64,000 bases of DNA from Salisapilia sapeloensis CBS 127946 (GCA_023334545.1 JAADVB010000006.1:108051-172050); one strand, 5' to 3'; shown: positions 1,099 to 39,409, numbered from the stretch's first letter. Program-made: numbers and translations. Notes: a model not told the origin generated them from the letters alone.

Positions 1099-1830
1099 TT
1101 ACACATTCAGCTCATCCATCTCCGCGCTCTCTTCAGACGCCTCTGCAGAGGTAGAAAAGTTGACAATGTCCGCATCTTGCGAGGTCGAGTAGTCGTCCTG
1201 TAGGTCGTCCGAGACCAAATCCAACGTAATCGACGGAGATAAGTCGACCGATCGTTCTGGAAGGCCTTGGAAGTGCTTCAACTCGTGCTCGTCGTCAATG
1301 GGTGTCGAGGCAGCCGAGTGGGTATCATGGCCGTCTTCGTCGTCGCCTTCTTCCCCCGAACTTGGGGAGGCAGCGAAACTCGGAGGTGACTGTAGTAATG
1401 CGTCCTGGTCGACGGACTGGAGAATGCTATCGACGAGTGAGTGTCCGTCGACGTGCTCCTCCGGAGCAGCAAACATGACCGAGTTCATGACAGCGGCTTC
1501 GTCCTCTGCATCGGCCTGTTTAGCCATGAGTCGCTGGATCTCGCGCTGGATTTGTTCTCGTTCGACGGCAGCGTCGGCGTCGGACGGCGCACAGAACTTT
1601 TTGACACGCCCGGGGAGCAAGTGATCGACAAAGCTCGGGTCGACCGGGTCGTAGTAATAGCCGTCGCCAACTTTCCGTTTCCGACTTTCAAGCTTTTCAT
1701 CGAGGAAGGGCTGACGCCATTGCCACGGGCACTTCATGATGGACTGGTGACTCGACCTGGCTTGCATCTTGAGGGAGAAGTTCGAGAAGTGAGGTCTGTC
1801 CGTCCGTCTTTTGGCGGGTTGGCATCCCAC
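1099..1830 (-). CDS. Hypothetical protein with basic stretch (SRKRK) and acidic, low-complexity C-terminal half; true start uncertain (ATG near 1737 or 1767)
   Basis: 243-codon ORF with protein-like composition, convergent on the dehydratase; no family motif recognised. Confidence 0.6.
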   Translation of the reverse strand: MGCQPAKRRTDRPHFSNFSLKMQARSSHQSIMKCPWQWRQPFLDEKLESRKRKVGDGYYYDPVDPSFVDHLLPGRVKKFCAPSDADAAVEREQIQREIQRLMAKQADAEDEAAVMNSVMFAAPEEHVDGHSLVDSILQSVDQDALLQSPPSFAASPSSGEEGDDEDGHDTHSAASTPIDDEHELKHFQGLPERSVDLSPSITLDLVSDDLQDDYSTSQDADIVNFSTSAEASEESAEMDELNV

Positions 1831-12067: not shown

Positions 12068-13192
12068 ATGGGGACTGCCGTGTCGATGCTGCTCTTCCAG
12101 CCACCACCGCCGTCGTACGGTTTCAAACGTCACTATATGTGCCTCAGTACACCGGTCTACAGCCGCATCTCGGCCTTTTACATCTCCAACCCGTAATACC
12201 TTATTGACATTCTTTATGACGATTTGACGTCTCAATGACATTACCATGTCATCGATACATCGTGCAGATCCGCGCAGTACACCATCCTCTTCTCACATGG
12301 CAATGCTGAAGGTAGAAGCTCTTACAATTCCCTTTTACTTCTACTCATGTACTACGAACAGATCTTGGCATGATTTACGACTGGTTTCGGATCATTAGTC
12401 GACGATTAGAAGTAGATCATCTATATGTCTATATAATATCTAGTAGTTACAACTAATCTTCGACTGGAATGACGCAGGTGAATGTCATGGCATACGACTA
12501 TCCAGGCTACGGCACGAGTGAAGGTGAACCGAGTGAAGAGAGCTGCTATGCTGCCGCTGATGCAGCGCTCAATTACCTCGTTTCGAATAAGAAGACGCCT
12601 CCGTCACGCATTATTCTGTACTCTATTCCTATACGACGTATCATGCCTTTGCTAATCACATACATAGGTACGGTCGATCACTTGGATCTGGACCAACGAC
12701 GTACATCGCGTCTAATCAGTCCGTGAAAGAGGATCCGGTGGCTGGTGTCATCCTCCAGAGTCCACTACTCTCTGTCTTTCGAGTCGCGTTCAACTTTAGG
12801 TTCACGCTGCCAGGCGACATGTTCTGCAACATCGATCGGATTGACCAGATCACATCGCCTGTTACGATCATCCACGGGACTCGAGATGAAGTCGTTCCGT
12901 TTTGGCATGGAGAAGAACTCTTTGAAGCGTCTCGACAAGAGTGGAGGTCGAAACCAATGTGGGTTGTCGATGCCGGACATAACAATATCGAGGCGCATTT
13001 GAGGTACTTGCATACGTATCAACTTTTTATGCGAAGGTGTAAGTAGATGGATATAGTGAGCTTGGAGATGAGTTCTTTTTGCATTTGAAGGACTTTGTCC
13101 GGATCTGTGATGAGACGGCCAAGATACGGAAACAAGATGCTTTGGATTGGGCACAAGAGTGCGCACAAGTCAAGATAAATGGTAGTAACTAG
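12068..13192 (+). CDS. ABHD17: ABHD17-family alpha/beta hydrolase (depalmitoylase-like), multi-exon
   Basis: Spliced motifs TILFSHGNAEDLG, NVMAYDYPGYGTSEGEPSE, YGRSLGSGP (catalytic Ser), ILQSPLLS, IIHGTRDEVVPFWHG, AGHNNIE. Confidence 0.9.
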
Positions 13193-13324
13193 TGCTATCA
13201 TATGAATGTCATTTAAACCCATTGCAGTTCTCCTTACCAAGCAGATTGTTCTCTACATCACGCGTTAGATTTCTATGGAGTAAGCGCTATCAGGTAGATG
13301 CCAAACATGCAGTTTATCATACGA

Positions 13325-14698
13325 TTAATTCTTTTCTCTGGCTCGATGTCTCTTTGTCAGCCGAACATTTACTTTATCTATCGCATCGGTTTTCATCGAC
13401 GGACTGTTCTCTGGGCCGCTGGTGTTCGTATCCATTGTAGCGAGCGCTTTTCGCTTCTTCGGGCTGCTATTCGCATGAGCTTTCTCCTCAAGAGCTTTGA
13501 TCTGGGACTGCATCATCGCTTCTTTAGCTCGGAAGGCCGCCTTGAGATCGGCAAGCTCCTGTTCAAGATCAGATACCTTGTTTTCCTTTTCCTCCAGTTT
13601 TTCGCTGAAAGCTTCTGCTAAGGTCTGTGTGACAGCTGATCGAAGGTTTCCCTCCGAAAGACTCTTGTGGATGTACTGCTCTGTTGCATTGTGCAGAGCA
13701 CTTAACGCAACGGAACTAACGCCCAATGAGAATTGCAATACATTGCGGAAGAGCTCGAGGAAAGCTGGTCGAGAAATCAAGTACTCGTTTCGTCTGTCCT
13801 CTTTGGATAGCAAGTCTTGGACTGCATCTTCATCATTAAGTTGGAAAAGACCTTGGAATTCAGTCCAAAGGTCTTCTTCTTCCATATCGGCTGCTGATTG
13901 TTCCTGGACAATATCAGTCGGTTCTTCCGGCTCATCACAGTCCGACAGATCGCCTTGGCCTGGAAGGGAGTCCATGAAGTCATCTTCAGTGCTTTCAGTA
14001 GAAACGGATAAGAGTTGCTCGTCCACCACATCTTGAGCAGATGATAATGAGTGGAGTAAAGCATCCCTAGATTCCTCGACTGCATCCTCCATCTTGTCAT
14101 CTTGTCCATCGTCGTCACTAAAGTCACTGTCATTCGACTCGTCGTCACTGTCTCCGAACCAAGACCACTCGCTTTCTTCATCTTGAACGTTTTCAACTTC
14201 TCCAGTTCTAGCTTGCCAGTTCTCGTAATTGCGGACGAAATCTGTCTTGGCGTACCGAGAAGCAGGCTCATTATCCGGCTCACCATTACTCTCTTGCCAC
14301 TGGTTATATATCAACGGAAGCTCCACCATCTCCGTCACATGATACAGTGTCTCTCGTCCACCACGTTGAATGGCACACATATCGTCGAAGCCATAGAGTT
14401 GAATGCCTTGAAGTCGACAAGCGCGAATAACATCATCAAGCGTAATGTGTGTCCTACTTCCATGTTGTGCCAGGACCAGCAGCGCCTGCACCAACTCCTG
14501 AATAAACGCCACAAGATGCTTTCTCGTACAAGTTGCCGTTGCTGCACAACTTTGGCGGAATCCAGCTCGGAGGTGGAATTTACGCATGAGCATATCAGGA
14601 AGTACCTTTTCGACCTCTCTCTGTCCATATTCACTTTCCTCTGCTACTTTCCGATTCGCATACACATCTCGTTGTCGCACGACATACCTCTCCATCAT
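13325..14698 (-). CDS. Tandem histone-fold-like protein: H4-like fold, acidic linker, truncated H3-like fold, coiled coil, NLS; ATG at 14698
   Basis: Single-exon ORF; nt 14602-14387 aligns without gaps to H4 I29-F100 (ends HITLDDVIRACRLQGIQLYGF vs [21 protein letters not shown]); nt 13780-13643 aligns to H3 L61-L109; SPKKRK NLS. By-eye alignment. Confidence 0.8.
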   Translation of the reverse strand: MMERYVVRQRDVYANRKVAEESEYGQREVEKVLPDMLMRKFHLRAGFRQSCAATATCTRKHLVAFIQELVQALLVLAQHGSRTHITLDDVIRACRLQGIQLYGFDDMCAIQRGGRETLYHVTEMVELPLIYNQWQESNGEPDNEPASRYAKTDFVRNYENWQARTGEVENVQDEESEWSWFGDSDDESNDSDFSDDDGQDDKMEDAVEESRDALLHSLSSAQDVVDEQLLSVSTESTEDDFMDSLPGQGDLSDCDEPEEPTDIVQEQSAADMEEEDLWTEFQGLFQLNDEDAVQDLLSKEDRRNEYLISRPAFLELFRNVLQFSLGVSSVALSALHNATEQYIHKSLSEGNLRSAVTQTLAEAFSEKLEEKENKVSDLEQELADLKAAFRAKEAMMQSQIKALEEKAHANSSPKKRKALATMDTNTSGPENSPSMKTDAIDKVNVRLTKRHRAREKN

Positions 14699-14726
14699 CT
14701 TCCAAGCAAAAGTCAAACTGAAGGCT

Positions 14727-14828
14727 TTCAAACTTTTTGGCGCGATATGTCCATTTTAATTATGTGCCATCTATCTTGTAAGAAGTATATAGTAGGTATA
14801 TTTTTATGATACAGCTTTAAGCGGGAAA
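14727..14828. promoter_or_regulatory. Divergent promoter with two E2F-type sites (TTTGGCGC 14736-14743; GCGGGAAA 14821-14828) and a CHR-type site (TTCAAA 14727-14732)
   Basis: Exact matches to TTTSSCGC in opposite orientations and to TTTGAA (minus strand) in the 159 nt between two start codons; function inferred from animal/plant consensus. Confidence 0.5.
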
Positions 14829-14857
14829 CTTATCGACCGGAACGGACCAGTAGGAAA

Positions 14858-16319
14858 ATGGAGGATGACGATTTAGACCAGCGAATTACGTTCTTGCTAC
14901 AGGAGATCGATGGTAACTTGTCTGCTGCACATCAAGCGGCGACACAGGTCTTTAGTAGCGTCCGACGGCATCACCAAGTGCTACGACAGATCCACTCGGC
15001 GACGCAGATCTGGCAGCCTCTTTTCGATGCCTGCAGAGGTCGTCAGCCCCCTCTACGTAGGCCTACGATGACACCGAGCAAGTATCCACACAGGACGTCT
15101 GCCGTCCATGTGAATAGCAATGCCGTGGAAGACGCGACGCCGGATGATTTAGACGGCACGTCTTTCGTACCGAATGCCGATGGCTTTAAAACCACCAAAT
15201 TACGCACGAGTGTGAATCAGAGCAATAGCGAGAGTGCAAATTCAAGTGCTGAGAGTGCAAAACTACCCAAGACGATGACACCGATCTTGCCAAAGAGTCC
15301 TGCTGGTAGACGTGCAAGACAGCAGCAGAACGAGTCCTCGACTTCGAACATTTTACATCATAATTGGGGCTCATTCTTGCGCACGGACGTTATTGATGTA
15401 CTTTTACCTACTACATTTCGTTATGTATGGAACTAATACGCTGCGGTAGGCTCAAGCAGCTACGCATACGGTCGGATCAGAGATTAGTAGTGTCGAGCAA
15501 GCGAGTCCTGGCGTCAATGTGAATCTGTCGGAAGTCGGAGCGTTTGAGCTGACACCGCATGACAAGTCTCGTCGTGCTGGTTCCCAGCCTGTTGCTTCGA
15601 ATGCAGACACGTCCAAGTCACCGAATAGGCAGAGTATGTCGCCACGAGTACGAATGGACGGATCGCATCGAAAGCGACAGAGACGCCTATCGGACGATCC
15701 TTCGACGCCGAAGAAGCGACATACGATGGGCAGAACAGCTTCACCGAATTTACGTCGAAAGTATGGCGCCGCACAGCAGGCGACGCCACCGAGATTCCAT
15801 AAAGCGAGGATGTCTGCACCAGAGCAGAATTCGACCAGTACAGACGCGAATGTCGAGATGACGTCACCTCTGCTTCGAACGACATTGAAAGGGATGGGGA
15901 GGAATACGCCATTGTCGAACCGAATCGCCGGTGCGACGTATGACGCCGGGTCTGCGTCGCAAGAGAGTAGGCTACAAGAGTACGACTCTTCCTTTTCTAC
16001 AGGCATGCCGCCTCCAGAGTTTACCTTGTCTCAATTCCCACCTTCGTTCCAGGTACATTGATGCATTATCTTAAAGAGATCTAGTAGCTCATGCATGACA
16101 TAGCAAGGGAAGAGTGCAGTGGCCTTGTCGACGTTGTATAGCAAGTTCCAGGGCAATGACGATGCATCTCGACCTGCTTTGTCCGTTCCGGAACTGATCG
16201 AGTCGATGCCGGATGAAGGAGAAGAGAAGATTGAGATCATGCTTGACTTGCTCGTCTCGCGGCGCTTCTTGCGTGCTTTTACGGTCGAAGGACGAATGTA
16301 CTGGCAAGCGTCTGTATGA
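14858..16319 (+). CDS. ASK1: DASH/Dam1 complex subunit Ask1-like protein with disordered S/T-P-rich middle and C-terminal winged-helix-like domain; introns ~15399-15450 and ~16052-16103
   Basis: N-terminal LDQRITFLLQEIDGNLSAAH..WQPLF closely resembles yeast Ask1 LDQEITVNLQKIDSNLS; three ORFs join in frame through GT-AG introns. Confidence 0.75.
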
Positions 16320-16393
16320 CAGTTGCAAAGTTAATAAACCGGTTTAAGTTTCCTCCTCTAGTATTTTCCTTTGGTGGTGACTGGTAGAGGTAC

Positions 16394-37464: not shown

Positions 37465-37699
37465 TTCACAAGTAAATGCTACTGCTGAGTAGAAGAATGT
37501 GCGTGTAGTCGTTCAACTTCCTTGGGACTAGCGGACAAGGTCGAGAATGCAGAAAGAACAAAGTAGAGCATTGCGATGTCGAACTCGACCTCGGATTACC
37601 ACGTGACTTGTTTTATATAGCTCGCCATTGGGTATACCTTCTATTCGAAAGATTCTTTGATATATTTTTAGTGGAGCCATTACATTACTTTTTTGTAGT

Positions 37700-39354
37700 A
37701 ATCTAGGTTCTATTCATGAAGTGAATCAGCTTTCCATCGATGTCACTATGCACAGAAAGCTTGGATATTTAGCCCGACAGAGTACATCATTACAACGATC
37801 ATAGAGCACAATCAGGCTGTGTCCGCGCGGAATGTCGATTCGGCAAATTTAAAGATTCACTTTTTGGAAGTCTGTTTATCATAATCAAATCGGGCAAATC
37901 CACGTTCGTTAAAACTTGTCAATTGTATTTTACCACTTGCCGTTGGAAACCCAACGAAACACTCCAATACAACTTTCCCTTCTAAAAGAAATACATAAGC
38001 GAGTGTTCTGTACTGCCGATGAAGATGTGGCTTTATTTTCTTGGTATATCTTTTTTTTCGTCTTTGATACAATGAGGCGGAAACCATCTTCGAGAAGATT
38101 TCCAGTCACGCCTGGTGCTCGAAATTTGCAGATTTGAAAAAGTGCGCGAAAGACTTGGAGAGCTCTTCGCTTTACTTGCGCTATTGAGCTCTTCGATATT
38201 ATTTCGGAACATACATAGTACAGTGTTAGACGAAATAATCCAGCGATATATGTGACTCACACTGTACGCCGTCCCAGTAAAGTAGCAAAGAGCTCAATAG
38301 CGCAAGTAAATCGAATGACACTTCAACCTGGACTTCCGACAATCAACTACGATACGCTCGACATTATGCCCCACGGAACCATGACAGAGGAATGGAAAGG
38401 TGAATAGTGATGTAGGAGTAGGAAGAAGCGGCAAAGACTCAGGCATTGATTCCTATTACAATTTTTACATGTTTTTTCATAACGCCTAATGTTCCTTTCT
38501 TAATACCCGATTATCCGTAAAACGAACGCAGCCTTAGTCATACAAGCACTTTGAAGCTTTAACCTGAGTTGAGATACTCTCGCTATGCTTAGGATGAAAC
38601 TGTACGCTCGAAGTTTCCACGTTGCAGACCAGATTTCCAAACTTGGAGCGCGCAAACACGCTCCAGCAAAGACTAGATGGGAGAAGAGTTTTCGTCATCT
38701 ATCTGACGCTAGCAACTCCTAGTAGAGTCTTATTCTATTGCGTGTATATCGTCGACCATGAAATGCAATGCTAAAACTCGTGATGCGCAACCCGATCCTC
38801 TGGAATTTTGACGTGAAAAGACCCTTCACAGCGCGGTGTCACGCATTGTTTAGGTGCAAACATGTTTATAACAAATCTAACAGTGTTCGCGTTCTCAAGT
38901 ACATGCATCCAAAGTCAATGTCAAAGCTATTCAGTCGTTTCAAAGCCAACATTTTCTCATGCAAAAGCTTTCGAGTCTACTAGATGAAAGCACCTCCTGT
39001 AGTTGGTAATCTATCTTAAGAAAACACGCGTGCTTGGACAATTTGTTTCTTACACAGTATTTTAACAGCGATTATCAGGCGCATGTCACGAAATCTTGAA
39101 CACGGACTACTCGCAGCACACGCTTCGTCATCACACCTCTAGCATCATGTCTCGATCGGATTGCTTCCATCTTGACGATAGTTTGCTCAATCCTACGCCA
39201 ACGCAGCGTCTCGTACGTTCTTGTGGAAACTAAGCACTTCAACTTGTCTGCTACAACAAACACACGCCGAAACACCCAAGTAGATTTCTACTCTTGACGT
39301 TTGTATACCACTGAAAGTACGCGTGCCTCTTCCCAGCGTACGAATATAGCTCAT
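37700..39354 (-). pseudogene. Possible decayed multi-exon gene of unknown identity
   Basis: Protein-like frames with scattered stops (LWMHVLENANTVRFVINMFAPKQCVTPRCEGSFHVKIPEDRVAHHEF*), apparent frameshift at a T8 run (38051-38058), candidate GT-AG introns. Confidence 0.3.
38166..38315. repeat. Inverted repeat: perfect 23-bp arms (38171-38193, 38288-38310), 94-bp spacer with internal 9-bp inverted repeats
   Basis: tttacttgcgctattgagctctt is the exact reverse complement of aagagctcaatagcgcaagtaaa; extends 5 bp with one mismatch. Confidence 0.85.
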
Positions 39355-39409
39355 AATCGCATTTGCTTCCTCCAGCACAAGTTGCTTCCTTCTACCGTAT
39401 ACCAAAACC

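What the first reader, a model, noticed from the sequence alone, without database searches (positions are those of the whole stretch)
14699..14857. Candidate cell-cycle module: histone doublet and Ask1-like gene share a 159-nt promoter with E2F- and CHR-type sites
Seen: start codons at 14698 (-) and 14858 (+); between them TTTGGCGC (14736-14743), GCGGGAAA (14821-14828, reverse TTTCCCGC) and TTCAAA (14727-14732, reverse TTTGAA) three nt from the first E2F site. Known: TTTSSCGC binds E2F-DP and TTTGAA binds LIN54 in DREAM-regulated cell-cycle genes of animals. Inference: both genes are co-expressed in dividing nuclei and the histone-fold protein may be an undescribed centromere/kinetochore partner in a DASH-bearing lineage. 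Head-to-head pairs are common in this window, so adjacency alone is weak; the motifs and the chromatin/kinetochore nature of both products carry the case.
Basis: partly seen in the sequence, partly recalled or inferred. Interest (0 to 1): 0.7.

Follow-up and report, generated by a model that had tools for sequence, protein, structure and literature searches.

The report
Conserved E2F-type promoter, Ask1–histone-doublet pair
In an oomycete, a kinetochore gene (Ask1) and a gene for a fused H4/H3-like histone protein share a 159-base promoter whose E2F-type and TTTGAA words recur at the same locus in other oomycete genera, which points to a shared cell-division switch; who binds the words and what the histone protein does remain untested.

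Summary
The + gene is a DASH Ask1 homologue: Pfam E 1.6e-10, with both introns confirmed by RNA assemblies. The - gene is an oomycete-restricted 457-aa protein. Its N-terminal fold is H4-like (E 7e-9), and its second block is best matched, weakly, by CENP-A/Cse4. An AlphaFold model packs the two blocks like a single-chain histone dimer (Z 13).

The window alone shows no global excess of TTTSSCGC (7 observed, 7.1 expected). Comparison with relatives decides the case.
- The head-to-head pair is kept in ten loci, counting the window, from Phytophthora, Peronospora, Globisporangium and Pythium-like lineages.
- Their intergenic DNA is otherwise unalignable with the window's.
- TTTSSCGC is about 25-40-fold enriched there.
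- TTTGAA/TTCAAA and CGCGCGC/TTTGGCG are the most widely shared words in an unbiased k-mer count.

RNA contig ends place one site about 20 nt upstream of the histone gene's start. The other site lies inside the Ask1 5'UTR.

An E2F-type bidirectional promoter is well supported. A LIN54/CHR reading of TTTGAA is only plausible, because spacing and orientation vary and oomycete HSFs bind GAATTC. The kinetochore-partner idea is untested. The scan noted this same locus before (s1-314504) and E2F-like promoters elsewhere in this genome.

The parts
13325..14698 (-). Single-exon CDS (457 aa plus stop) of the histone-fold doublet. It has an H4-like fold (about res 28-108), an acidic linker (about 130-290), an H3/CENP-A-like alpha1-L1-alpha2 (about 300-350) and a long helix/coiled coil (351-409).
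   Evidence: ORF. Oomycete homologues at 31-40% identity. Family profile against PDB hits histone H4 at E 7e-9 over the whole fold. AF2 pLDDT is 83-93 in both blocks. Foldseek top hits are H4 chains, rmsd 1.1-1.5 A. VIA-align gives Z 13.0 to Melbournevirus histone-doublet chains over model residues 25-361. The C-block profile's top four PDB hits are CENP-A/Cse4, E 0.13-0.24.
13253..13322 (-). 70-nt intron in the 3'UTR of the doublet mRNA (GT..AG on the - strand). The mRNA overlaps the 3' end of the convergent ABHD17 transcript.
   Evidence: Joint 13252/13323 seen in the contigs of three RNA assemblies.
14699..14857 (.). 159-nt shared intergenic region (37% GC). The stretch 14714-14810 is covered by no RNA contig.
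14736..14743 (+). E2F-type site TTTGGCGC, part of the quasi-palindrome TTTGGCGCGATA. It lies about 17-24 nt upstream of the inferred doublet TSS.
   Evidence: A counterpart TT(T)SSCGCGC lies within 200 nt of the doublet ATG in 10 of 11 loci (degenerate in Pe. belbahrii) and again in L015 and L016.
14727..14732 (-). TTTGAA on the doublet's sense strand (CHR-like word), 4 nt from the 7-mer E2F core and about 8-13 nt upstream of the inferred TSS.
   Evidence: TTTGAA/TTCAAA is shared by 7 of 7 lineage groups, which no shuffle reached.
14715..14721 (-). INR-like TCAGTTT (6 of 7 to the oomycete INR YCAYTYY). This is the inferred TSS region of the doublet gene.
   Evidence: RNA contigs of the doublet reach 14690, 14691 and 14713. 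Motif definition from PMC3599244.
14706..14712 (-). FPR match CTTTTGC (MWTTTNC), 2 nt after the INR-like word, as in the oomycete INR+FPR block.
14821..14828 (-). E2F-type site TTTCCCGC, 29 nt upstream of the Ask1 ATG and inside the Ask1 5'UTR (about +10 from the longest RNA contig start).
   Evidence: Ask1 RNA contigs start at 14811, 14839 and 14847. An Ask1-proximal TTSSCGC lies within 60 nt of the ATG in 8 of 10 loci and abuts the ATG in Phytophthora and Peronospora.
14786..14791 (+). TATATA, 20-25 nt upstream of the longest Ask1 RNA contig start. Candidate TATA-like element; inference only.
14858..15397 (+). Ask1 exon 1 (180 codons); the DASH_Ask1 domain is at residues 5-57.
   Evidence: Pfam PF08655 E 1.6e-10. 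62-66% identity to the Ask1 N-termini of six loci. Splice joint 15397/15450.
15450..16050 (+). Ask1 exon 2 (low-complexity, S/P/R-rich; no Pfam hit).
   Evidence: Joints in RNA contigs. Pfam scan negative.
16102..16319 (+). Ask1 exon 3, including the stop (small C-terminal helical domain; no significant Pfam hit).
   Evidence: Joint 16050/16102 in all four runs.

Best explanation
The 159-nt spacer is a compact bidirectional promoter. Its conserved working parts are two E2F-type sites, one serving each gene.

The site at 14736-14743, with the adjacent TTTGAA word, sits just upstream of an INR-like/FPR core from which the histone-doublet mRNA starts. The site at 14821-14828 lies about 10 nt inside the Ask1 transcript.

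The most likely mechanism is that an oomycete E2F/DP-family factor binds both sites and ties transcription of both genes to the nuclear replication/division programme. P. infestans E2F proteins bind CGCCA-type motifs in vitro. The TTTGAA(TTC) word acts as a co-element next to the doublet-side site. Its binder could be a LIN54-like CXC protein, as at animal CDE/CHR and E2F/CLE tandems, or an HSF-type factor; it is not identified.

Shown here: the motifs, their conservation and enrichment, the gene identities, the approximate transcript ends, and transcription of both genes.

Inferred: E2F binding, cell-cycle timing, and co-regulation.
For: 1. Motifs are at the stated places.
2. The Ask1/doublet head-to-head arrangement is kept in ten loci counting the window: P. 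sojae, P. infestans, Pe. belbahrii, G. polare, Py. brassicae and four Pythium/Globisporangium-like assemblies (Ask1 starts fixed by tblastn and by translation).
3. Enrichment in the orthologous spacers. TTTSSCGC: 10 in 2046 nt against 0.25 expected from the rest of the loci. TTSSCGC: 15 against 1.06. Control words TTSSGCG 0 against 1.2 and TTSSCCG 1 against 0.7. Against other intergenic DNA of five annotated loci: 7 against 0.29 and 11 against 0.71.
4. An E2F 7-mer with TTTGAA/TTCAAA within 30 nt lies within 200 nt of the doublet ATG in 10 of 11 loci. Only one such composite occurs in the other 149 kb.
5. Unbiased k-mers over 7 lineage groups: the top hexamer is TTTGAA/TTCAAA (7/7; the null never exceeded 6). 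The top heptamers are TTTGAAT, AATTCAA and CGCGCGC (6/7; null max 5), then TTTGGCG (5/7).
6. The window spacer does not align to the others above chance. Among the Pythium and Globisporangium loci, the pairs that exceed every shuffle align on a block containing the E2F site, in most cases together with TTCAAA.
7. Spliced RNA assemblies of the same organism put the doublet 5' end at >=14713 and the Ask1 5' end at <=14811, leaving 14714-14810 uncovered by any contig. INR-like plus FPR words lie at 14721-14706.
8. Literature: P. infestans E2F proteins bind CGCCA-bearing motifs like human and plant E2F (PMC11267843). The animal definitions are E2F TTSSCGC, CHR TTTGAA, and tandem spacing of 4 nt (PMC5716687).
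Against: - There are no binding data and no cell-cycle or life-stage expression data for either gene. Contig depths cannot rank expression.
- TTTSSCGC shows no excess across the window.
- No classical E2F target could be examined as a positive control, because only this window of the genome is accessible.
- The conserved core is often CGCGCGC, which a CGCG-box factor (CG-1 family) could also read.
- Two of ten loci lack an Ask1-proximal site.
- TSS positions come from assembly contig ends, not 5'-end mapping.
Confidence: 0.7

Rival explanations
1. Full first-reader model. The doublet-side tandem is a true CDE/CHR- or E2F/CLE-type DREAM site read by a LIN54-like protein. Both genes peak in dividing nuclei. 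The histone doublet is a centromere/kinetochore protein that works with the DASH complex.
For: - The window has exactly 4 nt between the E2F 7-mer and TTTGAA, as in animal tandems.
- The TTTGAA-type word is conserved in all lineage groups.
- The pair survived rearrangements that moved its outer neighbour 13 kb away.
- The C-terminal block's best PDB matches are CENP-A/Cse4, E 0.13-0.24.
- Other first-reader notes report a LIN54-like gene in this genome (unverified).
Against: - Spacing is 6-25 nt in the relatives and the orientation flips: TTTGAA in Phytophthora, TTCAAA in Pythium and Globisporangium.
- The extended word TTTGAATTC contains GAATTC, which P. infestans HSFs bind.
- The CENP-A similarity is not significant.
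- In Aphanomyces and in a metagenomic lineage the doublet gene keeps the E2F+TTTGAA module but Ask1 is not its neighbour.
- The adjacency to ABHD17 is kept more deeply than that to Ask1.
- The doublet family is oomycete-restricted, whereas Dam1-C is widespread (PMC5439489).
Confidence: 0.15
2. The words are conserved and functional but are not E2F/CHR. On this reading a CGCG-box factor (CG-1/CAMTA-like or other) reads CGCGCGC, an HSF-type factor reads GAATTC/TTCnnGAA arrays, and the promoter is constitutive or stress/stage-regulated rather than cell-cycle regulated.
For: - CGCGCGC is one of the top shared heptamers.
- P. infestans HSFs bind ungapped GAATTC and TTCGAATTC, and the family is large.
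- The oomycete CG1 protein has a binding site unlike that of plants, so it is unconstrained here.
Against: - A T-run 5' of the SSCGC core is kept in nearly every lineage (TTTCGCGC, TTTCCCGC, TTTGGCGC). This is the E2F signature and not part of a CGCG box.
- The Ask1-side sites TTTGGCGCC and TTTCCCGC lack CGCG altogether.
- The window has neither GAATTC nor a regular HSE array.
Confidence: 0.12
3. Chance occurrence of short words in a GC-poor spacer, with no regulatory meaning.
For: The window-wide count equals the expectation.
Against: - Recurrence in unalignable orthologous spacers, with about 24-40-fold enrichment for the 8-mer and 14-15-fold for the 7-mer, while two shifted control words are not enriched.
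- The unbiased k-mer ranking.
- Positional consistency next to each start.
Confidence: 0.03

Closest known systems
E2F-regulated (often bidirectional) cell-cycle promoters of animals and plants, and the E2F motif upstream of replication genes in Cryptosporidium
   Same: TTTSSCGC-type sites lie within a few tens of nt of the transcription starts, are phylogenetically conserved, and sit in a short divergent promoter. The lineage has E2F-family proteins with matching in vitro specificity (PMC11267843).
   Different: No E2F regulon has been described for oomycetes in the papers searched. Binding and periodic expression are untested. The targets here are a DASH subunit and a lineage-specific histone doublet rather than classical S-phase genes.
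Animal CDE/CHR and E2F/CLE tandem elements bound by DREAM/MuvB through LIN54 (PMC5716687, PMC3287175)
   Same: A GC-rich E2F/CDE-like site is followed by TTTGAA close to the TSS. The spacer is 4 nt in the window.
   Different: In relatives the spacer is 6-25 nt and the hexamer occurs in either orientation, often as TTTGAATTC or AATTCAAA. The binder is unknown, and an HSF-type reading is possible.
Oomycete INR+FPR core promoter (PMC3599244)
   Same: TCAGTTT, a 2-nt gap, then CTTTTGC at the doublet's inferred start fits the 16-nt INR+FPR layout.
   Different: The INR matches 6 of 7 positions (G instead of Y at position 4). The TTTGAA word itself fits neither INR, FPR nor DPEP.
Dam1/DASH complex subunit Ask1 in non-fungal lineages (van Hooff et al. 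2017, PMC5439489)
   Same: N-terminal DASH_Ask1 domain. Oomycetes are already listed as Dam1-C bearers.
   Different: Nothing new about the protein was established here. The long S/P/R-rich middle and the small C-terminal domain have no family match.
Single-chain histone doublets (Marseilleviridae H4-H3 and H2B-H2A doublets; engineered single-chain H2B-H2A)
   Same: The predicted intramolecular histone-fold pair aligns best to Melbournevirus doublet chains (Z 13.0, 143-163 residues). The order of the two blocks is H4-like first, H3-like second.
   Different: This is a cellular, oomycete-restricted protein with a roughly 170-residue acidic linker and a C-terminal coiled coil. The second fold appears to lack a separate alpha3. 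Its H3 affinity is weak by sequence (E 0.13). I did not establish which viral doublet type the matched chains are.

Membership tests
E2F-DP target site / E2F-type promoter | Match to TTTSSCGC (TTSSCGC core) | tested here: met
   Two exact 8-mers, at 14736-43 and 14821-28.
E2F-DP target site / E2F-type promoter | Location close to the transcription start | tested here: met
   RNA contig ends are at 14713 (doublet) and 14811 (Ask1). The sites are therefore about -20 and about +10. The ends come from assemblies, not from 5' mapping.
E2F-DP target site / E2F-type promoter | Conservation in orthologous promoters | tested here: met
   Doublet-proximal site in 9 of 10 Ask1-linked loci, plus a degenerate one. 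Ask1-proximal site in 8 of 10. Enrichment is 14-40-fold.
E2F-DP target site / E2F-type promoter | E2F/DP proteins of matching specificity in the organism | not tested
   Only the window of this genome is accessible. P. infestans has three E2F-family proteins that bind CGCCA motifs (PMC11267843).
E2F-DP target site / E2F-type promoter | Factor occupancy and cell-cycle-dependent expression | not testable with these tools
   No ChIP data and no staged RNA data. Contig depths cannot rank expression.
CHR / CDE-CHR tandem (DREAM-MuvB, LIN54) | TTYGAA hexamer near the TSS | tested here: met
   TTTGAA on the doublet sense strand at 14732-14727, about -8 to -13. It is shared by 7 of 7 lineage groups.
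CHR / CDE-CHR tandem (DREAM-MuvB, LIN54) | Fixed 4-nt spacer to the CDE/E2F element | tested here: inconclusive
   4 nt in the window; 6, 9, 13, 11, 6-12, 14, 19-25 and 25 nt in the relatives.
CHR / CDE-CHR tandem (DREAM-MuvB, LIN54) | Constant orientation relative to the gene | tested here: not met
   TTTGAA in the window, Phytophthora and Peronospora. TTCAAA in the Pythium and Globisporangium lineages and in L005. Some of these carry both orientations as TTGAAATTCAAA.
CHR / CDE-CHR tandem (DREAM-MuvB, LIN54) | Binding by a LIN54-type CXC protein | not testable with these tools
   No oomycete LIN54 data were found. A LIN54-like gene in this genome is only a first-reader note.
DASH complex subunit Ask1 (PF08655) | Pfam domain above the gathering score | tested here: met
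   41.2 bits against a cutoff of 20.7, residues 5-57. Orthologues carry the same Pfam hit.
Histone-fold doublet (H4-like + H3-like) | First unit is a complete H4-type histone fold | tested here: met
   Profile against PDB: H4 at E 7e-9 over H4 residues 23-100. Foldseek TM 0.7-0.88, rmsd 1.1-1.5 A.
Histone-fold doublet (H4-like + H3-like) | Second unit is an H3-type histone fold paired with the first | tested here: inconclusive
   The top four PDB hits of the C-block profile are CENP-A/Cse4, but at E 0.13-0.24. The AF2 model aligns as a whole to histone doublets at Z 13.0; overall pLDDT is 63 and pTM 0.53. No separate alpha3 is evident.

The most novel reading that the evidence does not exclude
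Oomycetes run an E2F plus TTTGAA (DREAM-like) programme. One of its conserved targets is a lineage-specific single-chain H4/CENP-A-like histone doublet. This doublet is made together with the DASH subunit Ask1 and acts at centromeres, for example as a CENP-A/H4-mimicking DNA anchor or placeholder for the kinetochore.
Probability: 0.1. Interest if true: 0.85.

Novelty: new member of a known kind. Interest (0 to 1): 0.55.

Why it matters
Transcriptional control of the nuclear cycle in oomycetes is essentially undescribed. The group includes major crop and animal pathogens with coenocytic hyphae and asynchronous mitoses.

This is a deeply conserved E2F-type bidirectional promoter with mapped sites, approximate transcript starts and a clear set of orthologous promoters. 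That makes it a ready test case for whether the E2F network, and possibly a DREAM/CHR-like branch, operates in this lineage.

It also marks an uncharacterised cellular H4/H3-like histone doublet as a probable proliferation-linked gene, which gives a rational starting point for finding out what that protein does.

Tried and rejected
- **Window-wide enrichment of TTTSSCGC:** none found.
- **Reading TTTGAA as part of the oomycete INR, FPR or DPEP core elements:** it fits none of them. A separate INR-like+FPR block lies downstream of it.
- **CCAAT box as a third element of a G2/M grammar:** absent in the window and present only in P. sojae.
- **Metagenome scan for more doublet loci:** 43 pattern matches, none confirmed.
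- **Ask1 adjacency in deeper lineages:** no Ask1 next to the doublet gene in Aphanomyces (L012) or in the metagenomic lineage L005-L007.
- **Profile-profile comparison of the two halves of the doublet:** no similarity. This is uninformative, because H3 and H4 are themselves dissimilar in sequence.
- **Pfam on all family members:** only a sub-threshold CENP-S hit.
- **Literature:** no paper found on an oomycete E2F regulon, on LIN54/MuvB in oomycetes, or on a cellular H4-H3 doublet.
- **Multi-stretch hits below the family in the exhaustive search (P0156-P0164):** the six scanned with Pfam carry canonical core-histone domains, and the one named record is a mosquito protein. They look like fused canonical histone gene calls rather than relatives of the doublet.
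- **Joined Ask1 protein:** it was never searched as one sequence.

Full report
**What is there.**
- The - strand ORF starts at 14698 (MMERY...) and the + strand ORF at 14858.
- Between them lie TTTGGCGC (14736-14743), TTTCCCGC on the - strand (14821-14828) and TTCAAA (14727-14732).
- The window is oomycete DNA. Its isocitrate lyase is 75-79% identical to those of Pythium, Globisporangium, Phytophthora and Lagenidium and 69-72% to Saprolegniales. The organism therefore lies outside the sampled genera.

**The two genes.**

*Ask1.* The + gene carries the Pfam DASH_Ask1 domain at residues 5-57 (E 1.6e-10, above the gathering score).
- Three assemblies of the same organism (X1, X2, X4) are spliced and so are RNA. 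They confirm introns at 15398-15449 and 16051-16101.
- The CDS is 14858-15397, 15450-16050 and 16102-16319 (452 aa).
- The exons were scanned separately by reference.
- Dam1-C in oomycetes is already known (PMC5439489).

*The histone doublet.* The - gene encodes 457 aa, with homologues in Phytophthora, Peronospora, Hyaloperonospora, Nothophytophthora, Globisporangium and Pythium, and a shorter one in Aphanomyces.
- An exhaustive HMMER search found 15 cluster representatives at E <= 1e-30. Every named one is an oomycete. Below them come ordinary H4 histones.
- A family profile hits histone H4 in the PDB at E 7e-9 over the whole fold.
- A profile of the second conserved block has CENP-A/Cse4 as its top four hits, aligned over alpha1-L1-alpha2, but only at E 0.13-0.24.
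- The AlphaFold model has mean pLDDT 63, with 83-93 in both blocks. Foldseek matches it to H4 chains at 1.1-1.5 A.
- As a whole, over residues 25-361, the model best matches Melbournevirus histone-doublet chains (Z 13.0). Engineered single-chain H2A-H2B scores Z 9-10 and H4 alone about Z 6.
- 'Histone doublet' is therefore supported in silico. 'H3-like' for the second half is probable, not proven.

**Is the promoter more than chance?** In the window alone the case is modest.
- TTTSSCGC occurs 7 times against 7.1 expected.
- Two of those sites in one 159-nt spacer has P about 1.5e-4.
- This is the only intergenic pair of TTSSCGC sites in the window.

The decisive evidence is comparative.
- I fetched the orthologous loci and fixed the Ask1 starts by tblastn and by translation.
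- The divergent Ask1/doublet arrangement is kept in ten loci counting the window. Spacers are 159-594 nt.
- The window's spacer does not align to any of the others above shuffled controls.
- Across seven of these spacers TTTSSCGC occurs 10 times in 2046 nt against 0.25 expected, and TTSSCGC 15 times against 1.06. The control words TTSSGCG and TTSSCCG are not enriched.
- Against only the other intergenic DNA of five annotated loci, the figures are 7 against 0.29 and 11 against 0.71.
- An E2F 7-mer with TTTGAA or TTCAAA within 30 nt lies within 200 nt of the doublet's ATG in 10 of 11 loci. That count includes Aphanomyces and a metagenomic lineage. Such a composite occurs once in the remaining 149 kb.
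- A k-mer count made with no prior motif ranks TTTGAA/TTCAAA first (7 of 7 lineage groups, never reached in 200 shuffles). TTTGAAT, AATTCAA and CGCGCGC come next (6 of 7; null maximum 5), followed by TTTGGCG.
- Among P. sojae, P. infestans and Pe. belbahrii the conserved islands include exactly these words: TTTGGCGCC abutting the Ask1 ATG and CGCGC...TTTGAATTC.

**Anatomy relative to transcripts.**
- RNA contigs of the doublet gene reach 14690, 14691 and 14713. Those of Ask1 begin at 14811, 14839 and 14847. The stretch 14714-14810 is covered by no contig.
- On the doublet side an INR-like word TCAGTTT (14721-14715) is followed after 2 nt by an exact FPR match CTTTTGC (14712-14706). This is the oomycete INR+FPR layout of PMC3599244.
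- That places TTTGAA at about -8 to -13 and the E2F site at about -17 to -24.
- On the Ask1 side the E2F site is inside the 5'UTR, at about +10. This parallels Phytophthora, where the site touches the ATG. A TATATA lies 20-25 nt upstream of the longest contig start.
- These positions are inferred from assembly ends, not from 5' mapping.

**Mechanism.** P. infestans E2F-family proteins bind CGCCA-bearing motifs in vitro, like human and plant E2F (PMC11267843). The simplest reading is that an E2F/DP factor occupies one site next to each start and couples both genes to the replication/division programme.

The TTTGAA word is clearly under selection, but its binder is open.
- The window's 4-nt spacing reproduces the animal E2F/CLE and CDE/CHR geometry (PMC5716687).
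- Spacing in the relatives is 6-25 nt and the orientation differs between lineages.
- The extended form TTTGAATTC contains the GAATTC that several P. infestans HSFs bind.
- I found no paper describing an E2F regulon, LIN54 or MuvB in oomycetes.

**The kinetochore-partner idea.**

Points in favour:
- The pair survived local rearrangement. The gene that lies beyond Ask1 in Phytophthora and Globisporangium sits about 13 kb away on the other side in the window.
- The second histone-fold block resembles CENP-A, though only weakly.

Points against:
- The doublet's convergent neighbour ABHD17 is conserved more deeply than Ask1. In Aphanomyces ABHD17 is present but Ask1 is not adjacent. Adjacency here therefore reflects local synteny as much as function.
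- The doublet family is confined to oomycetes and a few unnamed environmental sequences, whereas Dam1-C is widespread.
- An E2F-driven H4/H3-like protein could as well serve replication-coupled chromatin.
- I put this extension at 0.1-0.15.

**Relation to earlier notes.**
- The scan had already noted this same locus on an overlapping window (s1-314504).
- It had also noted the two genes separately (s1-314371, s1-312770).
- It holds unverified first-reader notes of E2F-like promoters at PCNA, MCM7, Nipped-B and a LIN54-like gene elsewhere in this genome. I could not reach those pieces, so they remain leads.

**Limits.**
- There are no staged expression data.
- No positive-control E2F target could be examined.
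- The metagenome scan found nothing.

**Verdict.**
- An E2F-type, deeply conserved bidirectional promoter is well supported (0.7).
- The DREAM/CHR reading is plausible but unproven.
- The kinetochore partnership is speculative.

Noticed in passing
window 38130-38152: A second E2F+TTTGAA composite (TTTGAA, AAAGT, GCGCGAAA). It lies in a roughly 2-kb stretch (37465-39400) with no long ORF, upstream of isocitrate lyase. An inverted repeat flanks it (about 38160-38195 against 38290-38316).
   Followed up: no
window 13055-13322: The doublet mRNA has a 70-nt 3'UTR intron (13253-13322). It overlaps the 3' end of the convergent ABHD17 transcript, and RNA assemblies merge the two. ABHD17 itself has a short intron ending at 13054.
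   Followed up: partly
window 15398-15449: Ask1 intron 1 is retained in the contigs of two of the three RNA assemblies (X1, X2) and spliced in one (X4). Retention would end the reading frame at 15434-15436.
   Followed up: no
L010:3637-4000, L011:3667-4000, L014:2532-3000, L015:2733-3000, L016:2411-2785, L003:4407-5000, L013:1-235: A further conserved word, (A)GGGTTTCCC (GGGTTTCTC in Nothophytophthora), sits about 10-35 nt upstream of the doublet-side E2F site in the Pythium, Globisporangium and Nothophytophthora loci. In the window the Ask1-side site reads GTTTCCCGC.
   Followed up: no
L001:4804-5000, L008:3796-4000, L009:3808-4000: An invariant block CAGTGCGGAAT lies downstream of TTTGAATTC in P. 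sojae, P. infestans and Pe. belbahrii (CAGCGCGGAAT in Nothophytophthora L013). It is probably the initiator region of the doublet gene.
   Followed up: no
window 13825-14310 (doublet residues about 130-290): The acidic linker between the two histone folds holds short motifs that are nearly invariant across oomycetes: EPD.EP...KTDFV.NY, SEWS, SL..AQ..VD..L, GQGY.SD.D and ED..W. They suggest binding sites rather than a passive tether.
   Followed up: no
window 1099-1830 (-): Homologue (60-74% identity) of the gene that lies directly beyond Ask1 in Phytophthora and Globisporangium. In the window it is about 13 kb away on the ABHD17 side. The flanks were rearranged while the Ask1-doublet-ABHD17 trio stayed together.
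   Followed up: partly
window 13400-16320: Run X5 (coded 'organism B') holds contigs 90-99% identical to both coding regions, so a close relative of the window's organism exists in public data. Its contigs do not cover the intergenic spacer.
   Followed up: no
proteins P0154, P0155, P0163, P0165, P0167, P0170, P0174, P0181: Unnamed proteins (those looked up come from NCBI, JGI and ENA records) of 309-431 aa match parts of the doublet profile at E 1e-25 to 1e-8. The four scanned with Pfam have no core-histone hit. They may be distant members of the family from unsampled lineages.
   Followed up: partly
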